A stretch of DNA of 64,000 nt from Macrostomum lignano (lineage: Eukaryota), in assembly GCA_002269645.1 (NCBI GenBank), contig NIVC01002766.1, forward strand, positions 78,331 through 142,330, given 5' to 3'. The notes under the pieces were generated by a model that saw nothing but the letters and a program-made list of their open reading frames with translations, ran no database searches and was not told the DNA's origin. Positions 31,616 to 62,483 of this stretch are shown one piece after another. The position numbers and the translations under genes were made by a program. Numbering within the stretch: the first letter of the stretch is position 1; each line of letters opens with the position of its first letter.

Positions 31616-31651
<36 letters not shown>

Positions 31652-37600: not shown

Positions 37601-40600
37601 GGGATATTCCAAGCTACACAATGGGATATTCCAAGCTACACAATGGGATATTCCAAGCTACACAATGGGATATTCCAAGCTACACAATGGGATATTCTAA
37701 GCTACACAATGGGATATTCTAAGCTACACAATGGGATATTCCAAGCTACACAATGAAGATATTCCAAGCTACACAATGGGATATTCCAAGCTACACAATG
37801 GGATATTCCAAGCTACACAATGGGATATTCCAAGCTACACAATGGGATATTCCAAGCTACACAATGGGATATTCCAAGCTACACAATGGGATATTCCAAG
37901 CTACACAATGGGATATTCCAAGCTACACAATGGGATATTCCAAGCTACACAATGGGATATTCCAAGCTACACAATGGGATATTCTAAGCTACACAATGGG
38001 ATATTCCAAACTACACAATGGGATATTCCAAGCTACACAATGGGATATTCCAAGCTACACAATGGGATATTCCAAGCTACACAATGGGATATTCCAAGCT
38101 ACACAATGGGATATTCCAAGCTACACAATGGGATATTCTAAGCTACACAATGGGATATTCTAAGCTACACAATGGGATATTCTAAGCTACACAATGGGAT
38201 ATTCTAAGCTACACAATGGGATATTCCAAGCTACACAATGGGGATATTCTAAGCTACACAATGGGATATTCCAAGCTACACAATGAAGATATTCCAAACT
38301 ACACAATGGGATATTCCAAGCTACACAATGGGATATTCCAAGCTACACAATGGTTATATTCCAAGCTACACAATGGGATATTCCAAGCTACACAATGGGA
38401 TATTCCAAGCTACACAATGGGATATTCCAAGCTACACAATGGGATATTCCAAGCTACACAATGGGATATTCCAAGCTACACAATGAAGATATTCCAAGCT
38501 ACACAATGGGATATTCCAAGCTACACAATGGGATATTCCAAGCTACACAATGGGATATTCCGAAGCTACACAATGGGATATTCCAAGCTACACAATGAAG
38601 ATATTCCAAGCTACACAATGAAGATATTCCAAGCTACACAATGGGATATTCCAAGCTACACAATGGGATATTCTAAGCTACACAATGGGATATTCCAAAC
38701 TACACAATGGGATATTCCAAGCTACACAATGGGATATTCCAAGCTACACAATGGGATATTCCAAGCTACACAATGGGATATTCCAAGCTACACAATGGGA
38801 TATTCTAAGCTACACAATGGGATATTCTAAGCTACACAATGGGATATTCCAAGCTACACAATGGGATATTCTAAGCTACACAATGGGATATTCTAAGCTA
38901 CACAATGGGATATTCCAAGCTACACAATGGGGATATTCTAAGCTACACAATGGGATATTCCAAGCTACACAATGGATATTCCAAGCTACACAATGGGATA
39001 TTCCAAGCTACACAATGGGATATTCCAAGCTACACAATGGTTATATTCCAAGCTACACAATGGGATATTCCAAACTACACAATGGGATATTCCAAGCTAC
39101 ACAATGGGATATTCCAAGCTACACAATGGGATATTCCAAGCTACACAATGGGATATTCCAAGCTACACAATGAAGATATTCCAAGCTACACAATGGGATA
39201 TTCCAAGCTACACAATGGGATATTCCAAGCTACACAATGGGATATTCCAAGCTACACAATGGGATATTCCAAGCTACACAATGAGATATTCCAAACTACA
39301 CAATGGGATATTCCAAACTACACAATGGGATATTCCAAACTACAAGCTCACCTTAGCCGCAGCATCGTACGCAGCCTTCAAGTCGGCCAGCTCAGCCAGG
39401 GCCTGATCTCTGGCAGCGCGTAATCCTTCAGCGAATTGGCGCTTCTCATTTAGCGCCGATTCGAATTCGGCGCGCGCTTCAGCTTGGCGCCGGTCGGCGT
39501 CCTCCATAGCGGCGGCGCAGCGCTCCCTGGTGTCGTGAGCCTCCTGACTGCCTGCTTGCCGGGCCAATTGAAGCTCTTCAACAGTGTGCGCCAGCTCGGC
39601 GGCCAGCTGATCCCGATCCTGCTCAAGGCAACGCTTCACTTCGTCTAGTTCGCGTTCTCGAGTTTCGAAGTTTTTGCGCGAATTAGCCAGCTCTGCTTTG
39701 ACCGACGCTAGGGCCGTTTTGTGCTCCTCGGCCTGCATAAGCAGCTCGGTTTGTAACTCTTTCACTCGTTCGTTGGCGCTGTCCAACTGCGATTCCACGA
39801 ACTTGTAGGCCTCTTGCATTTGTTCAATGAGCTGCAAGCGTGTGTTGTGTGTTGTGTATGGCTTAGTGACGTATGAGCCACACTTGCCCGGGTGACATGT
39901 TGGCGGCAGATAAAGTGGGATTTGCATCGAAGGAAGGAAGGGGAAACATTGTGAAGGGAGATTGTGAAGGGAGAGAGAAGGTGATAAAGAGAGGGAGATA
40001 AAAGCGAGGGTAAAGATGGTGATGCGAGGGGAAAGATGATGGAAGGGAGGGGAAAGATAATGGAAGGAGGAAGATGATAGTAGGGGAAGAAGACCAACGG
40101 AGAGGAAAGATGGTAAAGGGAGGGGAAAGATGGTAAAGGGAGGGGAAAGATGGTAAAGGGAGGGGACAGATGGTAAAGTTAGGGGAAATATGGTAAAGGG
40201 AGGTGTAGTGAGCCGCTAGTTTATGGTTAGGCGTCGCCCTTGTCAGCTGTTCCCTCGCCTTCGCCCTGGGTTGCTGTCTGCCGCTGGTCAGCTTCCCGCC
40301 CCTCCCTTTCGTCTGTCTGCTGCTGCCCTTGGCCTGTTCTGGCCTTTTGCGTCTTTGTTCTCAGCCCTTAGCTTCTCTGCTGTGGGCTGTCTCTGTTTCG
40401 TTCCCGTCCCGTTTTCCTCTGTCATGTGAGCAAGTCACATGACAGACTCTGCGTTCTTCAAGTCCTAAAGTGCAGTAAACATGTTTACTGCACTCGTTGG
40501 CCCTGTTTACCGGGTGAGTCACGTGCTTTCGGACCCCTCCCTTCTCTAAGGAGAGGAGTGACTCATGTTGCTAAAAATAGCAACTGAGTCACAGCCGCGT

Positions 40601-43600
40601 GTACTCTGGCCGGGGACCTCAAGTGACGTCAGTTCTAAAAATAGAACAAGTCACGAGGTCTTCCGCACGCTTCTACCCTGCCCAAGACTCTCGAGTGACG
40701 TCAGTTCTAAAAATAGAACGAGTCACGAGGTCTTCTGCGTGGGTGTTTCCCGGCTATAAATAGGAGCCCTCTCCCCCTTGTTTCCGTCAAGGAGTCTTTT
40801 CTGTGTCTAGTTCTGTGCTAGTCTTGTTCTTCCGTGTGATTACGTCCCGAGTGTCTGAGTCTCTGCATACATTGAGTCTGTTCGTATTGGTCTGACTGAG
40901 ACCCGACTAAAGCGCCACAAGCCTACGAGAGACTAACTCAGCCCTCCCTCTGCCATCCAAGCCCGGCAGGTACGGCTGACGAGACGCCTAGTACGTTGAA
41001 CTGCAAATCTGCACTAGGTGCTGTGTTCGTTGACTTCGTTATTTCGTTCCGACGGGAAGCTCACCTCACTGAAGGCCGAGACCTGAAGGAACTGGTGGCA
41101 GCACTACCTACGCTACTAAAGTTAAGAAGGCTTCTAATCGAGAGGACGGAGCCCAAGTCACTGCGCTGTACAGCAGGACAACCACAGGTACAACAGAGGG
41201 GAAAGATGGTAAAGGGAGAGTAGAGATGGTAAAGGGAGGGGAAAGATGGTAAAGGGAGTGGAAAGATGGTCAAGGGAGTGGAAAGATGGTAAAGGGAGTG
41301 GAAAGATGGTAAAGGGAGGGGAAAGACGGTAAAGGGAGGGGAAAGACGGTAAAGGGAGGGGAAAGATGGTAAATGGAGGGGAAATATGGTAAAGGGAGGG
41401 GAAAGACGGTATAGGGAGGTGAAAGATGGTAAAGGGAGGTGAAAGATGGTAAAGGGAGGTGAAAGATGGTAAAGGGAGGTGAAAGATGGTAAAGGGAGGG
41501 GACAGATGGTAAAGGGAGGGGAAAGATGGTAAAGGGAGTGGAAAGATGGTAAAGGGAGGGAAAAGATGGTAAAGGGAGGGGACAGATGGTAAAGGGAGTG
41601 GAAAGATAATAAAGGGAGGGGAAAGATGGTAAAGGGAGGTGAAAGATGGTAAAGGGAGTGGAAAGATGGTAAAGGGAGGTGAAAGATGGTAAAGGGAGGG
41701 GACAGATGGTAAAGGGAGGGGAAAGATGGTAAAGGGAGTGGAAAGATGGTAAAGGGAGTGGAAAGATGGTAAAGGGAGGGGAAAGACGGTAAAGGGAGGA
41801 GAAAGACGGTAAAGGGAGGGGAAAGATGGTAAAGGGAGGGGCAAGACGGTAAAGGGAGGGGAAAGATGGTAAAGGGAGGGGAAAGATGGTAAAGGGAGGG
41901 GAAAGATGGTAAAGGGAGTGGAAAGATGGTAAAGGGAGGGGAAAGACGGTAAAGGGAGGGGAAAGATGGTAAAGGGAGGGGAAAGATGGTAAAGGGAGGG
42001 GAAAGATGGTAAAGGGAGGTGAGGGGAACCAATGTAAAAGTGAGCAATAGGATCAACAATCAATTCCAGCAGATCCGCAGGCGTCACTCACAGTTTTAGT
42101 TCTCTCAAACTGCTTCTCCAGCCGTTCCACACTGGTAGTCCTATTTTTCATTTCGGTCAGCGCGGCATCCTTAGCGGCCGTCTCGGCCTCCAGTTTGCTG
42201 GCCAACTCCCGCAGCCTGTCAGCTTCAGCCTGCAGATCGGCAACCCGATCGTTGGCAGCGGAAGCCTCCAACTGAGCAGCGTCCAGTTGGAGCTCCTTGC
42301 TGGCCAGCTCCTTGCGCAAGTTGTTCATTGTAGACTCGATAGAGGCGACAGATTTCTTAGCGGCCGCTTCGCGATCGGCGGCTGCATTCTCGGCGGCCTG
42401 CTTGATTTTCTCTGCCTCTTCCAATGCCTCCTTGGAGGTGGCGTCGGCTTCAAGGCGAATCTGCAGCATCTCCATCCGCGCGATGCCCAAATCAGCGTCC
42501 AGCTTGTTTCGTTCCTCGCGAACTTTGGCGGCATCAGCTCTGGCTGCTTCCAACTCCTGTTCCAAGTAGTAGATCTTCTTCTCCGTGACGCCGAACAGGG
42601 TCTCGGCCGAGTCTGGCTCGGCCGCCGCAGCCATGGCCGAATCGTCCAATCTGGAGCTCATCTCGGCCAGCTGTTGGCGCATCTCGGCGCAACGGCGCTC
42701 GGCCGCCTCGGCCGAATCTTGGGCCTCCTTTTTGGCCTGCAACAGCCGGTTGATTTCGCTGTGGGGGGGGGGGTAGGCGGCGATGATTCTCATGCATACC
42801 GTGAGATTTTGTGATGATTCTCATGTATACAGTGAGATTTTGTGATGATTCTCATGTATACAGTGAGATTTTGTGATGATTCTCATGTATACAGTGAGAT
42901 TTTGTGATGATTCTCATGCATACAGTGATATTTTGTGATGATTCTCATGCATACCGTGAGATTTTGTGATGATTCTCATGCATACCGTGAAATTTTGTGA
43001 TGATTCTCATGTATACAATGAGATTTTGTGATGATTCTTAATGTTCTCATGTATACACTGAGATTATGTAATGATTCTCATGCATACAGTGAGATTTTGC
43101 GATGATTCTCATGTATACAGTGAGATTTTGTGATGATTCTTATGTATACAGTGAGATTTTGTGATGATTCTCATATAAACAGTGAGATTTTGTGATGATT
43201 CTCATGTATACAGTGAGATTTTGTGATGATTCTTATGTATACAGTGAGATTTTGTGATGATTCTCATATACACAGTGAGATTTTGTGATGATCCTCATGT
43301 ATACAGTGAGATTTTGTGATGATTCTTATGTATACAGTGAGATTTTGTGATGATTCTCATATACACAGTGAGATTTTGTGATGATTCTTATGTATACAGT
43401 GAGATTTTGTGATGATCCTCGTGTATACAGTGAGATTTTGTGATGATTCTCATATACACAGTGAGATTTTGTGATGATTCTCATGCATACCGTGAGATTT
43501 TGTGATGATTCTCATGTATAGTCGGTGTGATTTTGATATGCCAATTAACTATAGCCGAATACTCACGAATTAGCGCGCATCAACTCGTCAGTGAGGTGTC

Positions 43601-45828
43601 CAACGTGCTCTTCGGCTTCCCGTCGAGTACAGCTGCCCTGCCTGTTGGCCTGCAGTCGTTCCAGCGTCGCTTTCATCGCCTCCCGTTCGTGCATCAGCCT
43701 GTCGAACTCCTGCTCCAGGTAGCTGTACCGATCGGCATACCGGCTCATCTCTTGAAGCGACTCGGTCACGTGACCCAGCTGCTCGGCCTGCTCAGCTAAT
43801 CGACGATTTTCCTCTCGCAGCTCGGCCAGTTCGTTTGATTGGTGGCCGAGCTCGGACCGGCTGCGGCGGAGACGGTCTTCCAGATCGGAGCAGTCGCGCT
43901 CCCGTCTGGCCAGCTGGTTCTGCGATGCGCATGAGAATGAATAAAAATACCAACGCAAAGGTAATTCTGCCGATTCTTTTTGACTCCTGAACACATTACA
44001 TGCGCGCCAATGCTGTACTCATAGAAACGCTCAGAGCTGGTGAAGGGAGGGGAAAGATGATAAAGAGGGGTAAAGATTATGAAGGGAGAAAGATGATTAA
44101 GGGAAAGATGTTTAAGGGAGAAGAAAGATGATTAAGGGAGAAAGATGATTAAGGGAGAAAGATGATTAAGGGAGAAGAAAGATAATTAAAGGAGAAGAAA
44201 GATGCTTAAGGGAGGAGAAAAGATGATTAAGGGAGGGAAAGATGATTAAGGGAGGAGAAAGATGATCAAGGGAGGAGAAAGATGATCAAGGGAGGAGAAA
44301 GATGATTAAGGGAGGGAAAGATAATTAAGGGAGAAAGATGATCAAGGGAGGAGAAAGATGCTTAAGGGAGGGAAAGATTATTAAGGTAGAGAAAGATTGT
44401 GAAGGCAGGGGAAAGATACTGAAGGGAGGATAACGATGATGAAGGGAGGGGAAGATTGTGAAGAGAGGTGAAAGATGATGAAGTAAGCACAGCGGTGTAC
44501 AGCTCACACAGGGTGTACAGCTCACACAGGGTGTACAGCTCACACAGGGTGTACAGCTCACACAGGGTGTACAGCTCACACAGGGTGTACAGCTCACACA
44601 GGGTGTACAGCTCACACAAGGTGTACAGCTCAGGCAGGGTGTACAGGTCACACAGGGTGTAGAGCTCACACAGGGTGTAGAGCGACCCTTTGACTTTTTA
44701 ATCAGGGTGCCCACATGGGTTGTAGAAACATTAATAACAGCAAACCTGAGCATCAAGCAGCTGCTGCTCGAGCATGTCCTTCATAGTCATCTCCGACTGC
44801 AGCCGATGATTCAATTGTTGAATCGCCTCCGACTCGGCAGTCGATGCCGTCCATGTCGCCGCCGCGGAAGTTGACATAGACACCGAGCCAGCTACCGAGT
44901 TCCTCTGTCGGCAGCGTCGGCGAACCAGAGGCGAAGCGGCCAGGTGCAGCTTCAGCGGTGAGCAGGTAGCGGCAGTGGCAGCGTCCAGAGACCCGCCAGT
45001 TGGACCAGCGGCAGCAGCGGCGGCCGCAGCGGCGGAAGCAGCCGACGGGAACAGCACCCGAGCCAGTTGAGGACTAGCCGAAGACTTCTCCGCTGCTGCA
45101 CCAGGATGATCTTCATCGTCAGCGGTAGAATCCGTGTGCAAAGCTCGAAGCTGATCCAGGCTTAGGCAGCCGTCCTCGGTGTCTAACAGCTGTCGGGTTA
45201 GCGACATCACAGTGCGCTGACTGGCTGCGCCAAGGCGGTCGGCCGCGGCGGCCACGCGAGCCTGCGAGCTGCCTGTCTGCAGCCAGGCGCCCAGCAACAG
45301 CAGGCAGAGGCGCAGGGCCTGCGTGCATATTTAATCCGTTAGTTCTGAACTGACTCCCACTGACTCACAAGGAATCCCACTTACTCACTAGTAATCCCAC
45401 TGACTCATTCACTGGGAATCCCACTGATTCACTCATTAGGAATCCCACTGACCAAAATAAGCTAAACAGATCCCATAAAATCTTACCTGTAATTCGAATC
45501 CAGAATCCTGAGCCATCAGGCACTCCCAATTAACCAGTTCAACAATTCGAACCCGATAGAACGCGTCCAGGAACTCTTCGATAGCCGCAAATCGAGCCAT
45601 TGGCGTATCGATTGCAGCCGTTTGGGGCGCCGGAGCCGCGCAACAGCCGAGACTGACGCAGAGGTCGCGCAATAAGCGACCATCGGCCAAGTCTGACTCT
45701 GTTGGCGGTCTGTTGCCCTTGCCAGTGGAGGGAGAAACAGTGCCGGATAATAGCTGGCCAATCCAGGCCAACAGGCAGGACCGCCTAGCGGGGTCTACTG
45801 GGGCGGTGGTGTCCTCGTCCTGAAGCAT
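31222..45828 (-). CDS. NUMA1: Nuclear mitotic apparatus protein (NuMA/Mud-like), ~1480 aa; exons 45487-45819(45828), 44746-45318, 43567-43919, 42092-42758, 39352-39831, 36010-36396, 33849-34331, 32933-33530, 31222-31784
   Basis: All nine exons join in frame at GT/AG. N-terminal CH/Hook-like segment (LLAWIGQL...DLADGRLL), long coiled coil, and C-terminal CEDEDAHLLEWKRIAELQQRNQRQPAQLRSSYPVE, matching the recalled NuMA motif CQDEPEQLDDWNRIAELQQRNRVCPPHLKTCYPLE. Confidence 0.85.
31925..32890. repeat. Polypyrimidine low-complexity / short-unit repeat tract, last NUMA1 intron
   Basis: Almost purely C/T on the + strand. Confidence 0.92.
33638..33840. repeat. 20-bp minisatellite (CCTGACACATACCAAGAATT), ~10 copies, NUMA1 intron 7
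   Basis: Direct periodicity. Confidence 0.93.
34460..35935. repeat. 23-bp minisatellite (CTGACACATTTCTCAGCTTCATT), ~64 copies, NUMA1 intron 6
   Basis: Direct periodicity with repeated variant blocks. Confidence 0.97.
36462..39342. repeat. 22-bp minisatellite (TACACAATGGGATATTCCAAGC), ~130 copies, NUMA1 intron 5
   Basis: Direct periodicity. Confidence 0.98.
39930..42025. repeat. 20-bp purine-rich minisatellite (GGGAGGGGAAAGATGGTAAA), NUMA1 intron 4, interrupted by a solo LTR
   Basis: Periodicity at 39930-40203 and 41196-42025. Confidence 0.93.
40204..41195 (+). mobile_element. Solo LTR (~990 bp), probably Ty3/gypsy
   Basis: Begins TGTAGT and ends ACAACA, with a 4-bp GAGG target-site duplication on both sides. 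Contains a TATAAA box (~40755) and a duplicated TGACGTCA-containing segment. Confidence 0.8.
42783..43520. repeat. 31-bp minisatellite (CAGTGAGATTTTGTGATGATTCTCATGTATA), ~24 copies, NUMA1 intron 3
   Basis: Direct periodicity. Confidence 0.96.
44040..44685. repeat. Purine-rich degenerate repeat (44040-44470) plus 18-bp minisatellite GGGTGTACAGCTCACACA (~10 copies, 44495-44685), NUMA1 intron 2
   Basis: Direct reading. Confidence 0.9.
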
Positions 45829-48800
45829 TTTACAGTGTGATTAAGCTGAAGCAGGATGGGATCCCCAGTCCTGAAGCATTTTACAGTGTAATTAAGCCCA
45901 GGTAAGATGGGATCCCCAGTCCTGAAGCATTTTACAGTGTCATTAAGCTGAGGCAATATCGGATCCCCAGTCCTGAAGCATTTTACAGTGTGATTAAGCT
46001 GAAGCAGGATGGGATCCCCAGTCCTGAAGCATTTTACAGTGTGATTAAGCTGAGGTAGGATGGGATCCCAGTCCTGAAGCATTTTACACTGTGATTAAGC
46101 TGAAGCAGGATGATATCCCCAGTCCTGAAGCATTTTACAGTGTGATTAAGCTGAGGTAGGATGGGATCCCCAGTCCTGAAGCATTTTACAGTGTGATTAA
46201 GCTGAAGCAGGATGGGATCCTCAGTCCTGAAGCATTTTACAGTGTGATTAAGCTGAGGCAATATGGGATCCCCAGTTCTGAAGCATTTTACAGTGTGATT
46301 AAGCTGAAGCAGGATGGGATCCCCAGTCCTGAAGCATTTTACAGTGTGATTAAGCTGAGGTAGGATGGGATCCCCAGTCCTGAAGCATTTTACAGTGTGA
46401 TTAAGCTGAGGCAATATTGGATCCCCAGTCCTGAAGCATTTTACAGTGTGATTAAGCTGAGGCAATATGGGATCCCCAGTTCTGAAGCATTTTACAGTGT
46501 GATTAAGCTGAAGCAGGATGGGATCCCCAGTCCTGAAGCATTTTACAGTGTGATTAAGCTGAGGTAGGATGGGATCCCCAGTCCTGAAGCATTTTACAGT
46601 GTGATTAAGCTGAGGTAGGATGGGATCCCCAGTCCTGAAGCATTTTACAGTGTGATTAAGCTGAGGCAATATTGGATCCCCAGTCCTGAAGCATTTTACA
46701 GTGTGATTAAGATGAGGTAGAATGGGATCCCCAGTCCTGAAGCATTTTACAGTGTGATTTAGCTGAGGCAATATCGGATCCCCAGTCCTGAAGCATTTTA
46801 CAGTGTGATTAAGCTGAAGCAGGATGGGATCCCCAGTCCTGAAGCATTTTACAGTGTCATTAAGCTGAGGCAATATTGGATCCCCAGTTCTGAAGCATTT
46901 TACAGTGTGATTAAGCTGAGGTAGGATGGGATCCCCAGTCCTGAAGCATTTTACAGTGTGATTAAGCTGAGGTAGGATGGGATCCCCAGTCCTGAGGCAT
47001 TTTACAGTGTCATTAAGCTGAGGTAGGATGGGATCCCCAGTCCTGAAGCATTTTACAGTGTAATTAAGCCCAGGTAAGATGGGATCCCCAGTCCTGAAGC
47101 ATTTTACAGTGTCATTAAGCTGAGGCAATATCGGATCCCCAGTCCTGAAGCATTTTACAGTGTGATTAAGCTGAGGTAGGATGGGATCCCCAGTCCTGAA
47201 GCATTTTACAGTGTGATTAAGCTGAGGTAGGATGGGATCCCCAGTCCTGAAGCATTTTACAGTGTGATTAAGCTGAGGCAATATTGGATCCCCAGTCCTG
47301 AAGCATTTTACAGTGTGATTAAGCTGAGGCAATATGGGATCCCCAGTTCTGAAGCATTTTACAGTGTGATTAAGCTGAAGCAGGATGGGATCCCCAGTCT
47401 TGAAGCATTTTACAGTGTGATTAAGCTGAGGTAGGATGGGATCCCTAGTCCTGAAGCATTTTACAGTGTGATTAAGCTGAGGCAATATTGGATCCCCAGT
47501 CCTGAAGCATTTTACAGTGTGATTAAGCTGAGGTAGGATGGGATCCCCAGTCCTGAAGCATTTTACAGTGTGATTAAGCTGAGGTAGGATGGGATCCCCA
47601 GTCCTGAAGCATTTTACAGTGTAATTAAGCCCAGGTAAGATGGGATCCCCAGTCCTGAAGCATTTTACAGTGTGATTAAGCTGAGGTAGGATGGGATCCC
47701 CAGTCCTGAAGCATTTTACAGTGTGATTAAGCTGAGGTAGGATGGGATCCCCAGTCCTGAGGCATTTTACAGTGTCATTAAGCTGAGGTAGGATGGGATC
47801 CCCAGTCCTGAAGCATTTTACAGTGTAATTAAGCCCAGGTAAGATGGGATCCCCAGTCCTGAAGCATTTTACAGTGTCATTAAGCTGAGGCAATATCGGA
47901 TCCCCAGTCCTGAAGCATTTTACAGTGTGATTAAGCTGAGGTAGGATGGGATCCCCAGTCCTGAAGCATTTTACAGTGTGATTAAGCTGAGGTAGGATGG
48001 GATCCCCAGTCCTGAAGCATTTTACAGTGTGATTAAGCTGAGGCAATATTGGATCCCCAGTCCTGAAGCATTTTACAGTGTGATTAAGCTGAGGCAATAT
48101 GGGATCCCCAGTTCTGAAGCATTTTACAGTGTGATTAAGCTGAAGCAGGATGGGATCCCCAGTTCTGAAGCATTTTACAGTGTGATTAAGCTGAGGTAGG
48201 ATGGGATCCCCAGTCCTGAAGCATTTTACAGTGTGATTAAGCTGAGGCAATATTGGATCCCCAGTCCTGAAGCATTTTACAGTGTGATTAAGCTGAGGTA
48301 GGATGGGATCCCCAGTCCTGAAGCATTTTACAGTGTGATTAAGCCGAGGTAGGATGGGATCCCTAGTCCTGAAGCATTTTACAGTGTGATTAAGCTGAGG
48401 CAATATTGGATCCCCAGTTCTGAAGCATTTTACAGTGTGATTAAGCTGAGGTAGGATGGGATCCCCAGTCCTGAAGCATTTTACAGTGTGATTAAGCTGA
48501 GGTAGGATGGGATCCCCAGTCCTGAAGCATTTTACAGTGTGATTAAGCTGAGGTAGGATGGGATCCCCAGTCCTGAAGCATTTTACAGTGTAATTAAGCC
48601 CAGGTAAGATGGGATCCCCAGTCCTGAAGCATTTTACAGTGTGATTAAGCTGAGGTAGGATGGGATCCCCAGTCCTGAAGCATTTTACAGTGTCATTAAG
48701 CTGAGGCAATATTGGATCCCCAGTTCTGAAGCATTTTACAGTGTGATTAAGCTGAGGTAGGATGGGATCCCCAGTCCTGAAGCATTTTACAGTGTAATTA

Positions 48801-48932
48801 AGCCCAGGTAAGATGGGATCCCCAGTCCTGAAGCATTTTACAGTGTGATTAAGCTGAGGTAGGATGGGATCCCCAGTCCTGAAGCATTTTACAGTGTGAT
48901 TAAGCCGAGGTAGGATGGGATCCCTAGTCCTG
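45816..48932. repeat. 51-bp tandem array (GTCCTGAAGCATTTTACAGTGTGATTAAGCTGAGGTAGGATGGGATCCCCA), ~61 copies, abutting the NUMA1 start
   Basis: Near-constant part plus a core with about four recurring variants; the last unit overlaps the first codons of NUMA1. Confidence 0.98.
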
Positions 48933-51799
48933 CCCGGACTTCAAATTCAAGATGCTAAATTCCCTGGATCTAGAGTTCTATTCTAACTATGCCAACAGCT
49001 ATGATCCACAAATTTATGACCCACAAAATTGTTGTTGGAAAGTATAAAATATCAGCTTTAATGTGTCAAAAAATCAGCCTTTTATGCCTTTCAAAAAAGG
49101 TAATCTTTTTCTATTTGAGCTAGGGTTGTAGCTTTAGAATATATAGTATTATAGTATATACTATATATATATACTATATGAACTATAGTACTATATTGAA
49201 CCTCCATTTTTAGGGAGCACATGTCTATCAACATATGAACCACAAGTTATTTTTTTACACATCTTGCTTGTTGTGGAGACAAGAGGCTAATTCAAAATGC
49301 TAGCATTAGAATGAACAATTAAGTCAGTGACACCAACACTATCTTGGAGACATTTAATAAGGAGTATTTTGGTATTACATTATATAAACCTGACTACCTA
49401 GCATAATTTATGAGTTTCTGCTGATGTAATAAATATGATAGGCTATATATATAGCCTATATATATATAGGCTATATATATATAAAGTTATATATATATAA
49501 CTTTAAGTTCTTTTGAAATTAGTATTGTTATCATTGTATTAGTTTATTCAAATACTTTAGAGCATGCAAGATGCAAGTAAAGTGTAGTCTGATGAAAGTA
49601 GTAGTTAATTACTTATTCTAACAATTTTACTAATTTTTAGTACACTTGATATACACTAAAAATGTCTTTCAAAATTAATTTTAGATAAAAGTTCTTTATT
49701 AGGTGATGAGCCTGTTGCATCAAAAAGACCATGTAAAAAACTAAAAGGTAAGTAAATTGCAATGCCATTGGTGTGCATTAAATGATTATTCAAATGGGCT
49801 GTCAATATATTTGCCATAACATGCTCTTAAGGGTGTTTGAAGTTTAGCTCTGTTTCAAATTGACTTATTTCAATAAGTTGACAATCTTGTTTGGCCAGTC
49901 ATTAGCACCAAATTGTATCTATGGACTATGTCCTCTATAGGTATACTAGATGATAATAAATCAAAATAGAATTTTATATTGAGATGGCTATTACTATTAT
50001 ATTGGATCTAATAACCACCAACCAAGTAGTTTTTTGTTTCATTTTCTTTCAGAAATACAATTGCTTTAATAGACTCTTTACTCTCTTCCCTTGGCATTGC
50101 TACTAATGTGGCTATACCAATACTAATGATTTTAAGTGAAACTACTACTGCTGACTCAATAGGTATAAGTCTATTTTAATGAATATATATATTATTATTA
50201 TGATGCCATTACTTAACAGTTAAGAAAAAGGCATCCACTTGCATTTTAGAGTCAATGGAGTTGGCAAACATGGAGCATTGACTAATTGCATAGATGTGCC
50301 AATTAGTCGATGGAAAAGACAATGCTATCATACATCAACCATTAAAAGTCATTGTTTAAAGAGCACTTTTGCAATAAGGCTATATTTAGTATACTTTTTA
50401 ATGAAGGCTCAATTCTACAGTTATACATGTTCTGCTCATTTTACTTGCTCATTATTACTATAAAAATAACCATTTTACTATTTATACAGTCACCATAACA
50501 ATTAGGCCTAATAACTGCATAAGGCTAAAAAATATAATATATAATATATAATTTCAATTTTTTATTTCCTTTTTGTTTTTTAAAACTATTTTTATAGATT
50601 GAAAAATAATAATCTAGAACATAGTCATACATATTGCAAACTTTAAATACTAAACTAAAGTCCAGAAAAGAACATTGGATAGGGGCCTACACACACTTGA
50701 ACTAAGTCTAAGTCTAATGGTTCTTAACCTGTGAGTCGCAACCCTTAGTGGAGTTGCTACATTGCCTGACCATTTTCTAGGGGTCACAGCAAGAAATATG
50801 TGAGTAAGTAATACTTAATTATGCATTATATTGATTATAAAAGGGGTTGCAAACATTAAAAATTGATCTGCAAGTGAATAAATTGGTAGGCCCTAGTCTA
50901 GCTAGCTGTCTAGGATTAAGTAAGAATAGCTAGAGAAGGGAATGCTCTAATAGCAAATGTAAATATATTATAATGCCAAATTATGTTCCAATCCTAACCT
51001 CAAGATACAGGCCTATAATGTTTTTTTCTCTAATATTGGAGACTGGACTAGAAGCTTGTGTGAAACAATACTTTGCTAAATTGATTTGTCCCGCTATGAC
51101 TGTGATCAACTTTACAATTTTGTTGAGCTAAGGCCCTACCTGGCCTAATCTTACAATAGTTAGGCCACTATGCCTAGGCTAAACTAGACATAGACACTTA
51201 ATATTATTTGAATGAAAAGCTATTTATATACTATTAAACCATTACACACTTCTATTCTATTCACTCTAGAACCTAATAAATAGCTGATACAAGAAAAAAC
51301 CTTAAGCATTGATAACATTGCGGATTAAATAGTAGTAGTAGTAGTAGTAAGTTTGGCTCAGGCAAAGAGCCTGTTTTGCCTATATGATTTGATGTATTTA
51401 ATATTTGTTGAAAATGTTGATTTTCTTTAATAAAAAAGTCCAAACAAGAATTTGAATTGCCGCTTTTTTAAAGCGCATTGAATTATTAGCCTTTTCACGA
51501 AGTCTACTCCAGAATCGGAGTAAATTCCGATTCCAGAACCAGATTCGCTAGGAAAATGAAAAGCATCGAGTAAATTTTATTTTTTGTCAAAAATTACTTA
51601 ACATTTTTAATATTTTATTTTTTCTAAGTTACTTATTTTTTGCCTTTGAAGTTATATTAGAAGTTAAATTGACTTTAAATATTTTTCATTTTTTCCATAG
51701 AAATATGTAAATATGTCAGCCAGCTGTCCTTCTTCCGCCCTGCGCAGGGCCCTGCTTGGACTCAACCGCAGGGACATCAGCTAGGGCGGTGACCATGGC

Positions 51800-51960
51800 C
51801 CTCTCGGGTCGTGGCTGTTTTATTGCCAGGCATCGCCACCTCCGGGAAAAATCCGCAGTGAGAGGAATTATTGCCCATTCCACCTCTACGGTGTCGAGAA
51901 TGTGGAGCACTTCATCTGTGAATTTTGTACAGTAAATTTGTCCCCGACTTAAGCATTGAT
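51800..51960 (+). mobile_element. Decayed LINE 3' fragment (C-terminal Cys/His finger region)
   Basis: One frame reads CPFHLYGVENVEHFICEF; nucleotide similarity to 54520-54690. Confidence 0.45.
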
Positions 51961-52879
51961 CTTTGGACAAATTTACTATACAAAATAGTTACTACTCGTC
52001 AATTTTTGCGTCACACAAATATTTATTATCGTTATAGTCTCGTTAGATCCTTTTTCGTTTTATTAAAATAAACCTAGCTGAATATATGCACCACCGGAGT
52101 GCGAAACGCGCGACGACACTCGAATGTTGACTATTGGATTCCTATTCGTAGCTCGTAGCAATTCAGCGACGCAGCTTGTTGCCTTCGCTTCTCCCGCTTC
52201 AACTCTTCATTAGCCGCAGAAACGTCAGCTGCTGCATGGCCGCTTTGTCGTCCTGTCGATAAAGCGGTCGGTGTACGCGCAGGCTATCCTAAGTTTGCGG
52301 CCAGGCTCAGACTGGGTTTTTTAAGTTTGGAAATCCAGTTGCCAGCTGGCCCTTGGGGCTCAAAATCCTGTTGCCAATGGCTATTTTCTGTTGCCCATTG
52401 GAAACTAGCCAAATTCTCGAGGATGGATATTTTCAAGGCTACGTTTGAAAAGCAGAAATTTGTTCTCTCAACTCTAAGATTGCTATATCTATGCTGCAAA
52501 CAATCCAATGTACTATAAAATGAAAATCTTGATTGCTTGCTTGTATGTTTGTGCGCAATCTAACAATTCCATCATATCGATTCATATGACAATTTTTTAC
52601 ACTTTCAAAATTATTTTTGAAATTGGCAACTGGGCACACGGGGGAAAAGAAGTTGCCAGATTGGCCTCTGATGCCGAAAATCCAGTTGCCAATGAGATTT
52701 TCAAGGGGCCAAAAAAACCCGTATGGCCCAAAAAAACAGGGATCAGTTCTATATTATGCTTCTTGTGTGCTCTCCGCCACTGTTCGACTCGCTCTCCGCT
52801 CCTTTAACTGCAGCCGAGAGCGGCCGCCTCACCAGATTCTCCATTGAGTCGAGGATGCATGGGTAGTAGGCCCAGACTC

Positions 52880-54000
52880 CATTGAGGAGTCTTTACCGGT
52901 AGCGGAGAACTTCGCTACAGCCCGAATCGTCATTCAATTCGCGACTGGAGATAACGAGAGCAGACATCGACTCAGCCGAGCTGCTGTTATCGGAGCAGCT
53001 CCACCAGGTGCATGGTTGCCGGTCGGTTGGCACGGTTCCAAAAAGCACCGACTTGCGCGCCGTCAAATGTGGTGGCATCAATTCTCAGATTCTCTATAAC
53101 TACTGACTGCATGAGCGGTTTTCAAGTCCGCGCGACCTCCGTCGACTCGAGCAACGCCTTTTAAAGTACTAACGCCATAGAGTCAGTAAAAACAGTCTCA
53201 GCCGACAGGTTAATTGGGTCCCGATTGTCAAACGACCATTTCAGTGCTGTCCGATCGCATGGTCTACTGCTGAACAGCTGGGTAAAGCTTGAGCCGAAGC
53301 TGACAACATTACATTTACTCCAGAAGGTAGGGATTTAAGGAACAATAGGAGCGCCTCCATTGCTGAACAAAATGTTCGGACCGCTCATCGATCCGCTCCT
53401 TCTGCGCCAAGTCCCTTCGCCTGGAACAGGGGTGGCCTCGTCTAGGAATGCCGTGAGCTCAAACTCGGCCTCGCTGCTCAACTGCTCTACCAATAGAATT
53501 CAGATCGCAAGTTGCACTTCACATCGCGCAGATCTGGAAGGCCGTTCACTTTCTCCCGTAGTTTCAGTCCCGACAGCCATGGTTGAGCTGCGGTCTGCGA
53601 AGGGCCCGAACCTTGCGACCTTGTCAAGCCGACTATCCTCAGGCTTGTACGGCTCGTATTGCGGCACGCGAACCCTTGGGATTGTGAGACTAACTTTATC
53701 TATGCTCGGCATCTCCAGCTCGACAACGCTGCTCATTTCGATTTTCACCTTGGCTCCGGCAACCACTGCTGAGGTAGCATTCCTTGAGCTCGGCCGCGAG
53801 CCGTCCACCTCGCAGTAGCCCGCATCGACAGCCGCACTGTAGGTAGGTGGCTTTGGCCTCGGTCTTTTGCGGCACTCGCACTTGACGGTGCGATTGTTCA
53901 ACTCAGCAACCAGTCGGTACACTTAGGACGGATTAGTCATCAGGAAACTTAAACTTATAACGTCGCTCAGGGTATCTGAGCTTCGATTCTGGTACAGCGT
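52880..54000 (-). mobile_element. Possible decayed non-LTR retrotransposon ORF1/endonuclease remnant
   Basis: Coding-like GC content and a 140-aa open stretch (53500-53922) followed by broken frames; no diagnostic motif recognised with certainty. Confidence 0.25.
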
Positions 54001-54519
54001 TCCAACCGATGATGCTGACCTGCCCCGAGGACTCGACCAGGGGGCCAAGGCCGCTGATTTGCAATTGCGTAGCCGTCGTAACAAAGCCAGCAGTCCATCT
54101 TGAGCCCTTGACAAGCAAACAATTTTTAGGTGAGCGAGAGGCTGGAATAGAGAAAGGGGGCTGCAATGAGCTTTATATAACGCCTGCAGCGCTTGTGAGA
54201 GGTTGGGGGTGTGCTTCAAGCGTAAGTAGAATATTTTTCTTCCCTTGTCGCAATCTGTCGCTCTACTACATGTATGGTCGTATGCAACGAAACCATGAAT
54301 GTCATTCAATCCCTGTAAAATTGTGCACTTGCACTAATAGTGCGTGTACAGGAGGCCTTTTGCAAGTTGCAACACGCATCATTTTTACTTGGGTATGAAA
54401 CTGGCAGCGTACGCAAGCTTCTATTTTTAGGTCTTGAAACTGAACGCACAATCGTACACCAACAGGCACTGTACTGATACTAACTTTTCTTAAGTAGAAT
54501 TGCTTTTTAATGCTGAATA

Positions 54520-54690
54520 TACTACTATTAGACAACCATTGCCCTTCCAGGGTAAAATCCTCAGTGACGAATCCCCATTCTGCCTCTCCGGCGTTGAGAA
54601 TGCGGAGCACTTCATCTGTGACAGCCCCGACTTTGCTCAGGACAGACTCACCTACTTCGGCTTAAACCAGGATATTTACGGATTTAGTGT
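54520..54690 (+). mobile_element. Decayed LINE 3' fragment
   Basis: ESPFCLSGVENAEHFICDSPDFAQDRLTYFG resembles the SPxCxxxxxEtxeHfxcxCPxfxxxR terminal finger of LINE ORF2. Confidence 0.5.
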
Positions 54691-55267
54691 AATTAGATGT
54701 TAACTGACTAGTGATCCTGTTCTAACCTTAGCGACAGAAACGTTTTGCGTTAAAGATATTTGTTTAAAACATCCGCATCCGCCTAAACGATGAATTAAAA
54801 TATTTATTAAGATCTTAGTCTTTAGAACTGAAACATTCATAGTAGCCCTTCAAGACAGATTTCTTCGATAGCCTTCATAATGCATATACTGTATATAATG
54901 ATCTATAACAAGTTCTATAACAAGATATTCTAGAACAGTTCTTGTACTGTTCTATAACAAGAAGTTATAGAATTGATTGATTAAATTTGTTTTTTGCTTT
55001 GCAGCTGTCTAGCAAACATTAAAAACAGACAAAAATTAACGAAAAATCAATCAGTAAACGCGAAATAGCAAACAATTCAAAGATTTTGGAGCAAGGGGTG
55101 TTTGGAGAATCATGTCGAGTCAGTGTAATATTTTAAACACGATTGAGAAGGTTAAAATGGATACAGTACATTAATCAATCACTCAATCAATCAATCAGTC
55201 AAGCAATATATCAATCAACAATCAATCAATTATCAACCAACCCATCAATCAATCAACGAAACAATTA

Positions 55268-55525
55268 TCAATCAATAAGACGCGGCCTCAGATCACGTGA
55301 TCCGCCCAGGTGCCGTCTTAAATATTCGTACAGCGCGCTCTGCAACGGCCGGTCGTTCAACGATTTCTCATCTTCTTCTTGGAGCGTCGAGTCGGCGTCG
55401 TGGATCTCGGAATCCTCGGCGTAGTCGGGTAGGTAGCGACCGTTCGCTGGAGCAGCCTGGTGATGCACTAAGAGTAAGATCAACAGAAATAGCTTGGTTA
55501 GCGAGCTGTATGGCTCTGAGTTCAT
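55268..55525 (-). CDS. Small secreted protein / putative neuropeptide precursor (possibly first exon only)
   Basis: Hydrophobic signal-like stretch (KLFLLILLLVHHQAAPANG), acidic spacer and dibasic RR; GC-rich island in AT-rich DNA; AG acceptor 7 nt upstream of the ATG. Confidence 0.55.
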   Translation of the reverse strand: MNSEPYSSLTKLFLLILLLVHHQAAPANGRYLPDYAEDSEIHDADSTLQEEDEKSLNDRPLQSALYEYLRRHLGGSRDLRPRLID

Positions 55526-56523
55526 GCTTGCACTGACAATGACTGTTAGCTAAGTAATTTGCTTAGGTAACTTTATCCAGCTTGAAGGGCCAGCAAAGCC
55601 CGTAGCATTGTCTTGTTTATAGAGTTTTAAAACTCCCGGATGCTGTTTTTGTTCTCAAAATTATAATATCCGTCATTTTTCCGTCAAGATCAAACCAAAA
55701 TTTGTTTTTTGACTGTGAGCTGAAAATTTACATTAATTGTGGGGCTGGCACATTTACTCTATTGTCTGTATTGCGTCTGCCTGCCTGTTGTGGAGAAAGA
55801 GTTTTTTCGGAGAAGAAAATATAATGGACAAAACATACCCTCAACTTATAGAGGTGAATAATTACCTTTCCAAGATGCATTTCGAGTGGCAAGTTGACAA
55901 GATTAGAGATGCGATAAGGTAAACTTGGCTATGCTCAAAGAGTTTTTTTGCATTTCTTTAGTATCTTAGACAGACAGCAAACACATTTGCTATATGCATC
56001 TTAAGGATTTCGACAATATTTCGGCAAGCTGGCAGATATTTTTGTTTCAGAATTTGCTAATTCACTCTTTCATAGATATACACAAAGCGCTCGTATCCAC
56101 ACTTAGTTGAATCACCGACTGAAGGAACAGAGGTATAGCTTAGTTCACCTAAGCTCACTAGAAGAGCAGAAACTGCTGCAGATAAACATCTCGATGAAAC
56201 ATCTGTTATAGAAGTGTTCATTCACTGCTATGACGGATGTGGGAATGAATAACTGTACAAGTGAGCAAATATATGGCATTTTATAAGCCAATTGATGCTA
56301 GCAGTTTGACAAGCACTAAGGGACGACTTTTTGGCACTCTATGGTTCAACCCTGGGGCTTCGGAGCTACCAATTTAATAAACGGAGCATATAAAGTGCAA
56401 AATGCTATGTATACAAATTCGCTGCATGACTCACGGAAATCAATTGCTCAAATCCGTCAAAGTCTGATTTAAGCTGAGTAAAAAACAACAGTTTGCGAGA
56501 ATCCACGACAGGAGGGACGTCAG

Positions 56524-57285
56524 ATGCCGATCAATTATGACAACGTTTTTACGGACGTCGACTTGGCCGATTCGGCCGAGTTTCTGTCGCGTCTAATTGA
56601 AGTTGAGCAGTGCACAGAATTCGAAGACGAGCTTCAGGACGAGGCGGAGGACGATGAAGAAGAGAACCCTGCAGCTGAGAAGGGCGGCCGCACAGCATCA
56701 GGCCTATCCGGATTCAGACAGTGGCTCACGCGCACCAAGCAGCTCGGTCGGCGAGCGTCCCGCCTCCTGCAGGCGGTCGATTCGATGCACGCGCCAAGGG
56801 ACCAACGCAACCATATGGCCGACATGATTCGGCTCAACCTGCTGCTCGAGTGCAACAGCGCCATCGGATTCAACGCCGATGGAACTTTGCGCAACACGGA
56901 GGCGGCAGCCAGCGTTACACCCTTTGAAGACGACTTGGACGATGAAGACTCTGATGAAGATTCTGAGCATGTACGCGACGATGCCGAAGTACTCATGACC
57001 AAGGAACGCGTGCTGTCCAGCACATCGTCTGGCAGTCACAGTTTGATCATCGTCACCATTCTGATTTTGATTGGCTCCGTCGTGTCCGCGGTGGTGGCCC
57101 CTGACTGGTTGAAATGGCAGTCCGAATGGCTGCTCCTGGTGACGTCCACCGCCGCCAGTCTGATGATCAGCGTGGCCGTTTTTGCCAGAGCCGGCCGGAG
57201 GCGGAGGTCCATTGCCGCCTACCGCGAAATGGGCAAAGAGTTGCAGAGTAACCGGATCATGCTCAGTACCATTAAGCATGGATGA
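56524..57285 (+). CDS. Hypothetical 253-aa intronless protein with acidic tracts and two C-terminal transmembrane helices
   Basis: GC-rich ORF with CAG|ATG start context; two hydrophobic segments (LIIVTILILIGSVVSAVVA; WLLLVTSTAASLMISVAVFA) followed by RRRRR. Confidence 0.7.
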   Translation: MPINYDNVFTDVDLADSAEFLSRLIEVEQCTEFEDELQDEAEDDEEENPAAEKGGRTASGLSGFRQWLTRTKQLGRRASRLLQAVDSMHAPRDQRNHMADMIRLNLLLECNSAIGFNADGTLRNTEAAASVTPFEDDLDDEDSDEDSEHVRDDAEVLMTKERVLSSTSSGSHSLIIVTILILIGSVVSAVVAPDWLKWQSEWLLLVTSTAASLMISVAVFARAGRRRRSIAAYREMGKELQSNRIMLSTIKHG

Positions 57286-57961
57286 GCGCCCGGGGGAAGT
57301 ATGACCTGCGCGACCTCGACGAGATGACGTCTTTATATAAAGTGTTACCATCAACCTCAGGTGACATCGATCGTGTCTAACAGACGAGCGTCGCCTTCAA
57401 TCAGGTGACTCCTCAACCTTGTTTATAAAAAGTACTGAAAAATGATTTGGAAGATTGATGAAGCTCTTTTAATCACTAGCTAAGCTAGCTCACTGGCAAT
57501 ATTAGTAGTTGATGGTATATTTTAATTAATACAGTACATGTCCATTTGTTGCAGAATTGTTACTCGAATACACGTCAACTGCCACTGGCTTGCAAAAGTA
57601 TATTTGTGCATATATCTATTTACATGCGAAATCAAAATTGATTATTAATTTTTAAGTCTTGCTATGCAAGAAAACTTTACAACATTGCTGTACCGTGTAG
57701 AGCAATGAGTCATCATCTAGAGCAGTAGAATAATACTCATTTCAGTCAAGAAACAATGAAAGCGAGTTTTAAACTGCTTTAAAGTGGTTTGAAATCTGTT
57801 TCTAAGAATAGACAAACAACGTTGGGGAATCTCAATAGACTTGGGCTGACGAACAGAGGGCTTTCTGTGGATGCTGTGATTTTAAATATTTTTGTAACAC
57901 TATTTAATGTCGATTTTAGCATAAAATTATGATAGAAAATTCTTGTCGCTAGCTGACACTG

Positions 57962-59350: not shown

Positions 59351-59617
<267 letters not shown>

Positions 59618-62480: not shown

Positions 62481-62483
62481 CAC

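What the first reader, a model, noticed from the sequence alone, without database searches (positions are those of the whole stretch)
45810..48945. About 61 tandem copies of the NuMA acceptor/start junction: an array of decoy splice acceptors and 12-codon uORFs
Seen: on the sense (-) strand each 51-nt unit reads ...GCTTAATCACACTGTAAAATGCTTCAG|GAC. This gives a branch-point-like CTTAAT, a CAG acceptor and an aaaATG. In internal units the ATG opens MLQDWGSHPTSA* or a variant; the four main variants all stop at the same TAA. Only the last unit continues into NuMA (GAC GAG GAC ACC..., DEDTTAPVD), and an SL AUG added at that CAG would also be in frame. Inference: the array is an amplified 3' splice site/start region, probably in an outron or 5' intron. 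It could titrate trans-splicing or translation of a spindle gene according to copy number, and it raises the question of how the last of ~61 near-identical acceptors is chosen.
Basis: partly seen in the sequence, partly recalled or inferred. Interest (0 to 1): 0.8.

Follow-up and report, generated by a model that had tools for sequence, protein, structure and literature searches.

The report
Minisatellite copying NuMA's trans-splice acceptor
In the flatworm Macrostomum lignano a 51-bp minisatellite has copied the splice-acceptor/start junction of a NuMA-like spindle gene 61 times, but it is most likely one more of this genome's many unstable repeats, lying in upstream RNA that spliced-leader trans-splicing probably discards.

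Summary
Window 45817..48932 (minus strand) holds 61.1 head-to-tail copies of a 51-nt unit. Each copy carries CTTCAG|GAC and an ATG. The last copy runs into exon 1 of a 9-exon, 1481-aa NuMA-like gene.

The window is Macrostomum lignano, assembly Mlig_3_7, contig NIVC01002766.1. This species adds a spliced leader (SL) that ends in AUG.

The deposited protein for this locus is 5'-partial and starts at the first base after the last CAG. An SL-defined mRNA end would look like that, and SL-AUG + GAC GAG reads MDEDTT in frame. So "amplified acceptor in an outron" is supported, though only indirectly.

The regulatory reading (titration, uORF control) is not supported:
- Two sister loci carry the same array with only 18 and 15 units.
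- All eight introns of the gene hold arrays that vary just as much.
- Tandem arrays make up 40% of the window.
- The unit is flanked by an AGGAC microhomology, which points to origin by slippage.

Best reading: a neutral, hypervariable minisatellite in a discarded outron. Its internal acceptors are decoys of untested use. Counting SL-junction reads in public RNA-seq would settle it. Interest is modest.

The parts
45817..48932 (-). 51-nt minisatellite, 61.1 units. Sense-strand consensus: GACTGGGGATCCCATCCTACCTCAGCTTAATCACACTGTAAAATGCTTCAG. A higher-order block of units occurs twice.
   Evidence: TRF; 61 hits of the 30-mer core versus 0 in shuffles; unit parsing and variant string, in which the block 'FGEBBHCIBB' occurs twice.
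45820..45825 (-). Terminal acceptor CTTCAG. The junction lies between 45820 and 45819. This is the inferred SL trans-splice site actually used.
   Evidence: It matches the [T/C]TNCAG motif of M. lignano SL acceptors (PMC8629364). The deposited 5'-partial CDS of this locus starts at 45819.
45826..45828 (-). Genomic in-frame ATG of the last unit (MLQD...), 9 nt upstream of the acceptor. UniProt models use it as the start. It is removed if the mRNA is trans-spliced.
   Evidence: P0006 and P0007 start MLQDEDTT. The NCBI models lack it.
48927..48931 (-). 5' copy of the AGGAC microhomology at the upstream edge of the array (gggcAGGACtaggg).
   Evidence: Read from the sequence. The same boundary is present in L001 and L003.
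45811..45821 (-). 3' edge of the array: AGGAC (45817-45821), then G, then a second AGGAC (45811-45815) in unique exon sequence. These are the short direct repeats at which the unit was probably first duplicated.
   Evidence: Read from the sequence.
45487..45819 (-). Exon 1 of the NuMA-like gene as annotated (DEDTTAPVD...GFELQ), ending at the donor CAG|gtaaga. It encodes the first part of the hook-like N-terminal domain.
   Evidence: Gene model; P0003; homology to a Tubulanus protein carrying Pfam HOOK_N_NuMA.
31222..45819 (-). Whole CDS span of the NuMA-like gene. Nine exons: 45828/45819-45487, 45318-44746, 43919-43567, 42758-42092, 39831-39352, 36396-36010, 34331-33849, 33530-32933, 31784-31222. 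All introns are GT-AG and every intron holds a minisatellite.
   Evidence: My model, with its first three residues (MLQ) removed, matches the deposited P0003 sequence read side by side; both are 1478 aa and no difference was seen. The CDS coordinates reported for L002 agree with the model.
48933..49453 (-). AT-rich unique flank just upstream of the array. It is the presumed promoter or start of the outron; this is inferred, not shown.
   Evidence: It aligns at 88-93% identity with the same position in L001 and L003. It has many TA-rich, TATA-like stretches and no donor motif.

Best explanation
The array is a hypervariable minisatellite (VNTR) in the outron of a NuMA-like gene of Macrostomum lignano. 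An outron is the 5' part of a pre-mRNA that spliced-leader trans-splicing removes.

The first duplication arose by slippage or unequal exchange between two AGGAC pentamers 51 nt apart. One of them spans the acceptor (ttcAG|GAC). Each unit therefore carries the acceptor, its upstream context and an ATG. The array then expanded and turned over like the other arrays of this genome.

The productive mRNA is made by joining the SL (which ends ...UUGCAUG) to the last CAG. The SL's own AUG then starts the protein in frame (M-DEDTTAPVD...). The whole array, with its 60 upstream AUGs, is discarded.

The internal acceptors are sequence-identical decoys on their intron side. Any use of them would give non-productive leaders (MDWGSHPTSA*, then MLQDWGSHPTSA* and so on), unless such RNAs are trans-spliced again further downstream. 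Their cost appears to be tolerated, and copy number is not under visible constraint.

Shown: the array, its boundaries, its variation between loci, the gene model, the frame relations and the motif matches. Inferred: trans-splicing at the last CAG (from the annotation, not from reads), transcription of the array, and neutrality.
For: - Species and locus: 99% to M. lignano BOX15_Mlig021455g1; L002 is identical to the window.
- SL sequence, the acceptor motif [T/C]TNCAG, and repeats known to inflate distances between trans-spliced genes in operons: PMC8629364.
- The Mlig_3_7 gene 5' ends were cut at peaks of SL-containing reads by the TBONE pipeline: PMC5730564.
- The deposited CDS are 5'-partial and start at the junction in this locus, and 3 nt downstream of it in the two sister loci.
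- SL + exon reads MDEDTT in frame.
- The flatworm SL AUG is known to act as initiator: Cheng et al. 2006, as cited in PMC9851317.
- There is no GT[AG]AG motif in the array or in the 2.2 kb upstream.
- The only non-Macrostomum N-terminal homologue (Tubulanus) starts 8 residues before the aligned LIAWINSL, so no upstream coding exon is expected.
- The same array sits at the same boundaries in L001 (18 units) and L003 (15 units).
- L001 and L003 flanks are 99.67% identical, yet their arrays differ in unit types.
- All 8 introns hold arrays covering 45-98% of the intron, with very different copy numbers between loci.
- Arrays make up 39.7% of the window.
- AGGAC is present at both edges.
Against: - No RNA reads could be examined here. 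The SL site is inferred from where the deposited CDS begins.
- The two sister loci start 3 nt later (EDTT), and I cannot explain this.
- The 3' 27 nt of the unit (CTTAATCACACTGTAAAATGCTTCAG) varies much less than the middle of the unit in all three arrays. This could reflect constraint rather than chance.
- This is the only one of the gene's nine acceptors embedded in an array. The intron arrays stop 23-169 nt short of their acceptors and carry 0-1 [CT]TNCAG motifs each, against 67 here. The situation is therefore not the genomic default.
- Neutrality is argued from variability in three copies of one assembly, not from population data.
Confidence: 0.67

Rival explanations
1. Regulatory decoy array. 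The internal acceptors and uORFs soak up SL trans-splicing or ribosomes, so array length sets NuMA output.
For: All 61 acceptors share identical upstream context, and 60 of 61 keep CAG. The 3' half of the unit is nearly invariant in all three arrays. This is the only acceptor of the gene that lies inside an array.
Against: Copy number differs 3 to 4-fold between copies of the locus (61, 18, 15). That is within the range of the gene's intron arrays. Two loci with 99.67% identical flanks carry quite different arrays. There are no expression data. uORFs are absent from an mRNA trans-spliced at the last site.
Confidence: 0.12
2. The array holds or is the promoter. Transcripts start inside or just upstream of the last units, are not trans-spliced, and use the genomic ATG (MLQDEDTT).
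For: The ATG is in frame, has A at -3 (aaaATGc) and follows an in-frame TAA. UniProt models start there.
Against: All three NCBI transcript-based CDS are 5'-partial and lack this ATG, although it lies only 9 nt upstream. That is hard to explain if the transcripts included it. According to PMC8629364, 85% of neoblast-specific genes are SL trans-spliced.
Confidence: 0.08
3. The array lies in a conventional first intron. An unannotated non-coding exon further upstream is cis-spliced to the last CAG.
For: GT[AG]AG motifs exist 2.2, 3.9 and 5.7 kb upstream of the array. Every other array of this gene is intronic.
Against: No upstream exon is annotated in any of the three loci. There is no donor motif within 2.2 kb or inside the array. 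The CDS is called partial at the junction.
Confidence: 0.07
4. Assembly artefact: the array or its length is a product of long-read mis-assembly.
For: M. lignano is notoriously hard to assemble (PMC5730564). The near-perfect homogeneity of the L001 array (98%) could be consensus smoothing.
Against: Three separate contigs carry the array at the same boundaries, with different unit variants and lengths. The window array has 19 distinct unit sequences and an internal duplicated block. ML2-assembly-based UniProt models also contain the last unit's ATG.
Confidence: 0.03

Closest known systems
Repeat-inflated outrons and intergenic spacers of trans-spliced genes in Macrostomum lignano (Ustyantsev & Berezikov 2021, PMC8629364)
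   Same: Same species and same assembly. [quoted passage not shown] The acceptor motif is [T/C]TNCAG.
   Different: That work subtracts repeats as noise. It does not describe a repeat whose unit contains the acceptor itself, which gives one gene 15-61 tandem candidate SL sites.
5'-flanking or promoter VNTR minisatellites, e.g. MNS16A at human TERT (PMC3750000, PMC5438627, listed); by my recollection also the insulin VNTR
   Same: A tandem array of 10-100-bp units at the 5' end of a gene, with copy-number polymorphism, internal variant units and unequal-exchange dynamics.
   Different: Those arrays act, where they act at all, through transcription-factor sites. Here the unit carries a splice acceptor and an AUG, and it is probably removed from the RNA.
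Removal of upstream AUGs ('sanitisation' of the 5' UTR) by SL trans-splicing (Hastings 2005; Danks & Thompson 2015, as summarised in PMC8629364)
   Same: 60 upstream in-frame AUGs lie in the segment that trans-splicing at the last CAG would remove. This is the situation the hypothesis says trans-splicing makes tolerable.
   Different: The hypothesis concerns scattered uAUGs. Here the uAUGs come with copies of the acceptor, so the 'sanitiser' itself has 60 wrong targets.
Flatworm SL 3'-terminal AUG used as initiator methionine (Cheng et al. 2006 J Biol Chem 281:733, cited in PMC9851317)
   Same: The SL ends in AUG and is in frame with the first exon codon (MDEDTT). The deposited CDS has no start codon of its own.
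   Different: Use of the SL AUG was shown for Schistosoma mansoni transcripts. It has not been shown for this gene or this species.
Alternative SL acceptor sites in trypanosomes (Nilsson et al. 2010, cited in PMC9851317)
   Same: Several candidate AG acceptors upstream of one ORF, which can give different leaders and uORF content.
   Different: Those sites are dissimilar and few. Here they are near-identical copies at a strict 51-nt spacing.

Membership tests
Minisatellite / VNTR | Head-to-tail tandem repeats with a unit of about 10-100 bp | tested here: met
   Period 51, 61.1 copies, 92% matches, no indels.
Minisatellite / VNTR | Copy number varies between alleles or copies of the locus | tested here: met
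   61.1, 18.1 and 15.1 copies in L002 (= window), L001 and L003, at the same boundaries.
Minisatellite / VNTR | Interspersed variant units and higher-order blocks, as left by unequal exchange or conversion | tested here: met
   19 distinct unit sequences. The block 'FGEBBHCIBB' is present twice. The unit types differ between the three arrays.
SL trans-splice acceptor / outron | The organism performs SL trans-splicing | tested here: met
   The window is M. lignano. [quoted passage not shown]
SL trans-splice acceptor / outron | Acceptor motif at the mRNA 5' end | tested here: met
   CTTCAG|GAC fits [T/C]TNCAG.
SL trans-splice acceptor / outron | No cis 5' splice site upstream of the acceptor (the Conrad et al. 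1993 rule, as cited in PMC8629364) | tested here: met
   There are 0 GT[AG]AG motifs in the array, and the nearest upstream one is 2.2 kb away. This is a motif test only.
SL trans-splice acceptor / outron | SL-containing reads or cDNAs joined at the site | not testable with these tools
   Only indirect evidence is available. The transcript-based 5'-partial CDS starts at the junction in this locus and 3 nt downstream in the sister loci. The annotation pipeline cuts at SL-read peaks.
NuMA / Mud / LIN-5 family | N-terminal hook (CH-like) domain | tested here: inconclusive
   A direct Pfam scan gave no hit. Transitively, the N-terminus matches Tubulanus XP_074650242.1 (E 2e-6, 31-36% identity), and that protein hits PF21670 HOOK_N_NuMA at E 1e-13. 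UniProt names the M. lignano copies 'HOOK_N domain-containing'. The AlphaFold model was too poor to test the fold (pLDDT 42).
NuMA / Mud / LIN-5 family | Conserved C-terminal NuMA motif (human ...LDDWNRIAELQQRNR) | tested here: met
   CEDEDAHLLEWKRIAELQQRNQ aligns to human NuMA chain 6hc2_B at E 0.0022, and weakly (E 0.18) to 3ro2_B.
NuMA / Mud / LIN-5 family | Long central coiled coil between globular ends | tested here: inconclusive
   About 1000 residues are heptad-like and rich in E, L, Q, R and A. Only weak coiled-coil-type Pfam hits were found. No coiled-coil predictor was run.
uORF-mediated translational control | The uORFs lie in the 5' leader of the mature, translated mRNA | tested here: inconclusive
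   The uORFs exist in the DNA. The annotated mRNA begins downstream of all of them. Reads are needed to decide.

The most novel reading that the evidence does not exclude
The array is a natural competition experiment that the cell resolves actively. On one version, internal acceptors are used and the products are trans-spliced again until only the 3'-most site remains. On another, a purine-rich element in exon 1 (GACGAGGAC) licenses only the last acceptor. Either way, array length would tune how much productive NuMA mRNA each homeologue yields, in a species with known karyotype instability.
Probability: 0.1. Interest if true: 0.6.

Novelty: new member of a known kind. Interest (0 to 1): 0.3.

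Why it matters
If the plain reading holds, this is a clear single-locus illustration of two known ideas:
- M. lignano genes are stuffed with fast-evolving minisatellites.
- SL trans-splicing lets junk, including dozens of upstream AUGs, accumulate 5' of an acceptor at little cost.

The locus also has practical value. It is a ready-made substrate for asking how a trans-splicing machinery picks one of many identical acceptors. The species has transgenesis and public SL-read data, so the question is cheap to answer.

For annotation, it shows why this gene's CDS is 'partial'. The start codon probably comes from the SL, and the UniProt start at MLQD is probably not the one used.

Tried and rejected
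- Protein search with the N-terminal 187 aa found nothing, not even the known paralogues. This is a limitation of the word index.
- Protein search with the array's only open sense frame (NHTVKCFRTGDPILPQL repeats) found nothing. There is thus no sign of a dispersed family or of an annotated ORF across the array. This is a weak negative.
- RNA folding of the last four units plus exon 1 gave z = -1.64. There is no significant structure that would hide the internal acceptors. The GGGAUCCC palindromes do pair in the model, but not beyond chance.
- The AlphaFold2 model of the N-terminal domain, built from a 2-sequence alignment, had pLDDT 42. I therefore did not run a fold search.
- Sequence and profile searches of the N-terminus against PDB gave only CH-domain hits at E above 1.
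- The gene identifiers Mlig032826, Mlig021455 and Mlig022445 appear in no searchable paper.
- An exact look-up of the neighbouring RPL13 product, meant to obtain more annotation of the window, found nothing on record.
- Rfam and tRNA scans of the window found nothing. No SL-like sequence is present in the window.
- TRF masking as the cause of the annotated start was considered and rejected for this locus. TRF ends the array 3 nt after the annotated CDS start.
- An open 968-codon frame runs through the array. I dismissed it as coding because a 17-codon unit without a stop in one frame is expected by chance, and no homologue exists.


Full report
**What is there.**
Tandem Repeats Finder reports a single array at window 45817..48932: period 51, 61.1 copies, 92% matches, no indels. 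On the minus (sense) strand the consensus unit is GACTGGGGATCCCATCCTACCTCAGCTTAATCACACTGTAAAATGCTTCAG. A 30-mer core occurs 61 times in the window, all inside the array, against none in shuffles.

Parsing the units gives 61 ATG anchors, with 59 spacings of 51 nt and one of 50 nt. 60 of 61 units keep CAG. 55 of the 60 internal units open a 12-codon ORF ending at the same TAA, and there are a few exceptions. The last unit runs without a break into ATG CTT CAG GAC GAG GAC ACC..., and a TAA lies four codons before that ATG.

**Whose gene it is.**
Downstream on the minus strand I could build a clean nine-exon GT-AG model of 1481 codons, spanning 45828..31222. A search of the large protein collection identified it as Macrostomum lignano, 99% identical to BOX15_Mlig021455g1.

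The cluster holds three NCBI proteins and two UniProt models. The contig of one of them, P0003 (NIVC01002766.1, assembly Mlig_3_7), is base-for-base the reverse complement of the window.

The protein is NuMA-like on three grounds:
- Its C-terminal CEDEDAHLLEWKRIAELQQRNQ aligns to human NuMA in PDB 6hc2 at E 0.0022.
- Its N-terminus matches, at E 2e-6, a Tubulanus polymorphus protein that itself hits Pfam HOOK_N_NuMA at E 1e-13.
- The middle is about 1000 residues of coiled-coil-like sequence.

A direct Pfam hit to the hook domain was not obtained, and the AlphaFold model was unusable. I therefore call it NuMA-like rather than proven NuMA. The Tubulanus homologue begins only eight residues before the aligned LIAWINSL, so no upstream coding exon is expected here.

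**Is the last CAG a spliced-leader acceptor?**
- M. lignano adds one 35-nt SL, CGGTCTCTTACTGCGAAGACTCAATTTATTGCATG, to about 30% of its genes and to 85% of neoblast-specific genes. The enriched motif at SL acceptors is [T/C]TNCAG (PMC8629364). CTTCAG fits that motif.
- The Mlig_3_7 annotation cut mRNA 5' ends at peaks of SL-containing reads with the TBONE pipeline, and ORFs were then called by TransDecoder (PMC5730564).
- The deposited protein of this locus is '5'-partial' and begins DEDTTAP. Its CDS starts at window 45819, the first base after the CAG.
- The ATG only 9 nt upstream is not part of the model. This is what one expects if the transcript model begins at the trans-splice junction.
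- Joining the SL there reads AUG GAC GAG GAC = MDEDTT in frame. The flatworm SL AUG is a documented initiator (Cheng et al. 2006, cited in PMC9851317).
- Neither the array nor the 2.2 kb upstream contains the GT[AG]AG donor motif. This fits the rule that an acceptor without a cis donor is trans-spliced.

This evidence is indirect, because I could not look at reads. The two sister loci are annotated as starting 3 nt later (EDTT), and I cannot explain that.

**How the array arose and how it behaves.**
The array is bounded by the pentamer AGGAC. It reads gggcAGGACtaggg at the upstream edge and cttcAGGACgAGGACacc at the exon. A 51-nt segment between two AGGAC copies, one of which spans the acceptor, is what replication slippage or unequal exchange would duplicate. 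That explains why the unit happens to include the acceptor, the ATG and three exon bases.

The same array, with the same two boundaries, is present in two other copies of the locus in the assembly. L001 has 18.1 units, almost all of one variant. L003 has 15.1 units of other variants. L001 and L003 are 99.67% identical over 9 kb of upstream flank, yet share almost no unit types. The window array contains a ten-unit block that occurs twice. These are the usual signs of rapid minisatellite turnover, although some assembly noise cannot be excluded.

**Context.**
- Tandem arrays cover 39.7% of the 64-kb window and 55% of the NuMA gene span.
- Every one of the eight introns holds arrays occupying 45-98% of its length.
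- Their copy numbers differ between loci by 1.5 to 13-fold. For example, the intron 1 array has 4 versus 52 versus 13 copies, and the intron 5 array 131 versus 22.

The 61/18/15 variation at the 5' array is thus unremarkable, and there is no sign that its length is held constant.

**What is unusual.**
This is the only one of the gene's nine acceptors that lies inside a repeat. The intron arrays stop 23-169 nt short of their acceptors and carry 0-1 [CT]TNCAG motifs each, against 67 in the 5' array. The 27 nt upstream of the junction vary much less among the 94 units of the three arrays than does the middle of the unit. Both facts are compatible with chance and history, but they leave room for some constraint.

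On their intron side the 60 internal acceptors are indistinguishable from the used one. They differ only in what follows: GACTGGGGATCC versus the purine-rich GACGAGGACACC. If used, they would give leaders reading MDWGSHPTSA* followed by MLQDWGSHPTSA* repeats. RNA folding gave no significant structure that would mask them.

How the last one is preferred remains open. Candidates are an exonic enhancer, exon definition through the donor 342 nt downstream, or repeated trans-splicing that ends at the 3'-most site. This is the one interesting question the locus poses.

**Verdict.**
The interpretation 'amplified acceptor/start junction in an outron, SL AUG in frame' is supported indirectly. The proposed function (titration of trans-splicing, uORF control) is not supported, and the variability data argue against it.

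The most likely account is a neutral, hypervariable minisatellite in a discarded outron, tolerated because trans-splicing removes it. I put about 0.65-0.7 on this. Rivals and their weights:
- decoy regulation, about 0.12
- promoter in the array with use of the genomic ATG, about 0.08
- conventional intron with an unannotated upstream exon, about 0.07
- assembly artefact, about 0.03

It is a new instance of a known kind of sequence in a genome known for it, with a twist worth one simple read-counting experiment.

Noticed in passing
window 1..64000; NuMA gene span 31222..45828: The window is saturated with minisatellites. 26 merged arrays cover 39.7% of the window and 55% of the NuMA gene span. 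All eight NuMA introns are 45-98% array.
   Followed up: yes
L001 10393..12701 vs window 45359..45452; L001 16096..19327 vs window 41196..42019; L001 19976..20453 vs window 36451..39344: Orthologous intron arrays differ 1.5 to 13-fold in copy number between the three copies of the locus. Examples: intron 1 has 52 vs 4 vs 13 units, intron 4 has 161 vs 41, intron 5 has 22 vs 131.
   Followed up: partly
L001 1..9077 vs L003 144..9229; arrays at L001 9078..10000 and L003 9229..10000: The two sister loci are 99.67% identical over 9 kb of flank, yet their 51-nt arrays share almost no unit variants (18 near-identical units versus 15 mixed units). This means either extremely fast array turnover or consensus noise in the assembly.
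   Followed up: partly
L001 10001, L003 10001 vs L002 10001 (window 45819): The deposited CDS of the two sister loci start at GAG (EDTT), 3 nt downstream of the start in this locus (DEDTT), although the junction sequence is identical. Unexplained; it may be peak-calling jitter in the annotation pipeline.
   Followed up: partly
window-wide, consensus units of 23 arrays: The pentamer GAATC/GATTC is present in 8 of 23 distinct array units. The family-wise P is about 0.02 by unit shuffling. This hints at a shared core or common origin of some arrays. The 51-nt unit itself lacks the pentamer but has the related GGGGATCCCA, and the intron 1 unit has TGGGATTCCCA.
   Followed up: partly
window 33635..33845 and 36451..39344 (minus-strand introns 7 and 5): These intron arrays begin only 3 and 7 nt after the exon's donor GT. 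The intron 7 unit (CTTGGTATGTGTCAGGGATT) carries both a donor-like GGTATGT and a CAG in every copy. Repeated splice-site look-alikes are thus not confined to the 5' array.
   Followed up: partly
window ~46071..46120 (minus strand): One unit is 50 nt long because of a 1-nt deletion. Its ATG opens a roughly 95-codon ORF that runs through the remaining units and overlaps the NuMA start out of frame, ending at 45798.
   Followed up: no
window 63198..63806 (+), also 62695..63003 (+): An ORF with CCHC zinc-knuckle motifs (CFRCNAKDHWARSC, CSKCGRVGHLRDAC) at the edge of the window. It looks like the gag of a retroelement.
   Followed up: no
window 17878..18543 (-), 25632..25949 (+), 27762..29641 (+), 55268..55525 (-): Neighbouring genes are ribosomal protein L13-like, ribosomal protein L36e, a DHDPS-family (PF00701) gene with a 26-nt array in an intron, and an 85-aa secreted-looking ORF. 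The 85-aa ORF lies 6.3 kb upstream of the array on the same strand, probably too far for an operon unless much of the spacer is repeat.
   Followed up: partly
protein P0002 (UniRef A0A1I8FCF6): A UniProt entry named 'RING-type domain-containing protein' is a frameshift-riddled model of another copy of this NuMA-like gene from the older ML2 assembly.
   Followed up: no
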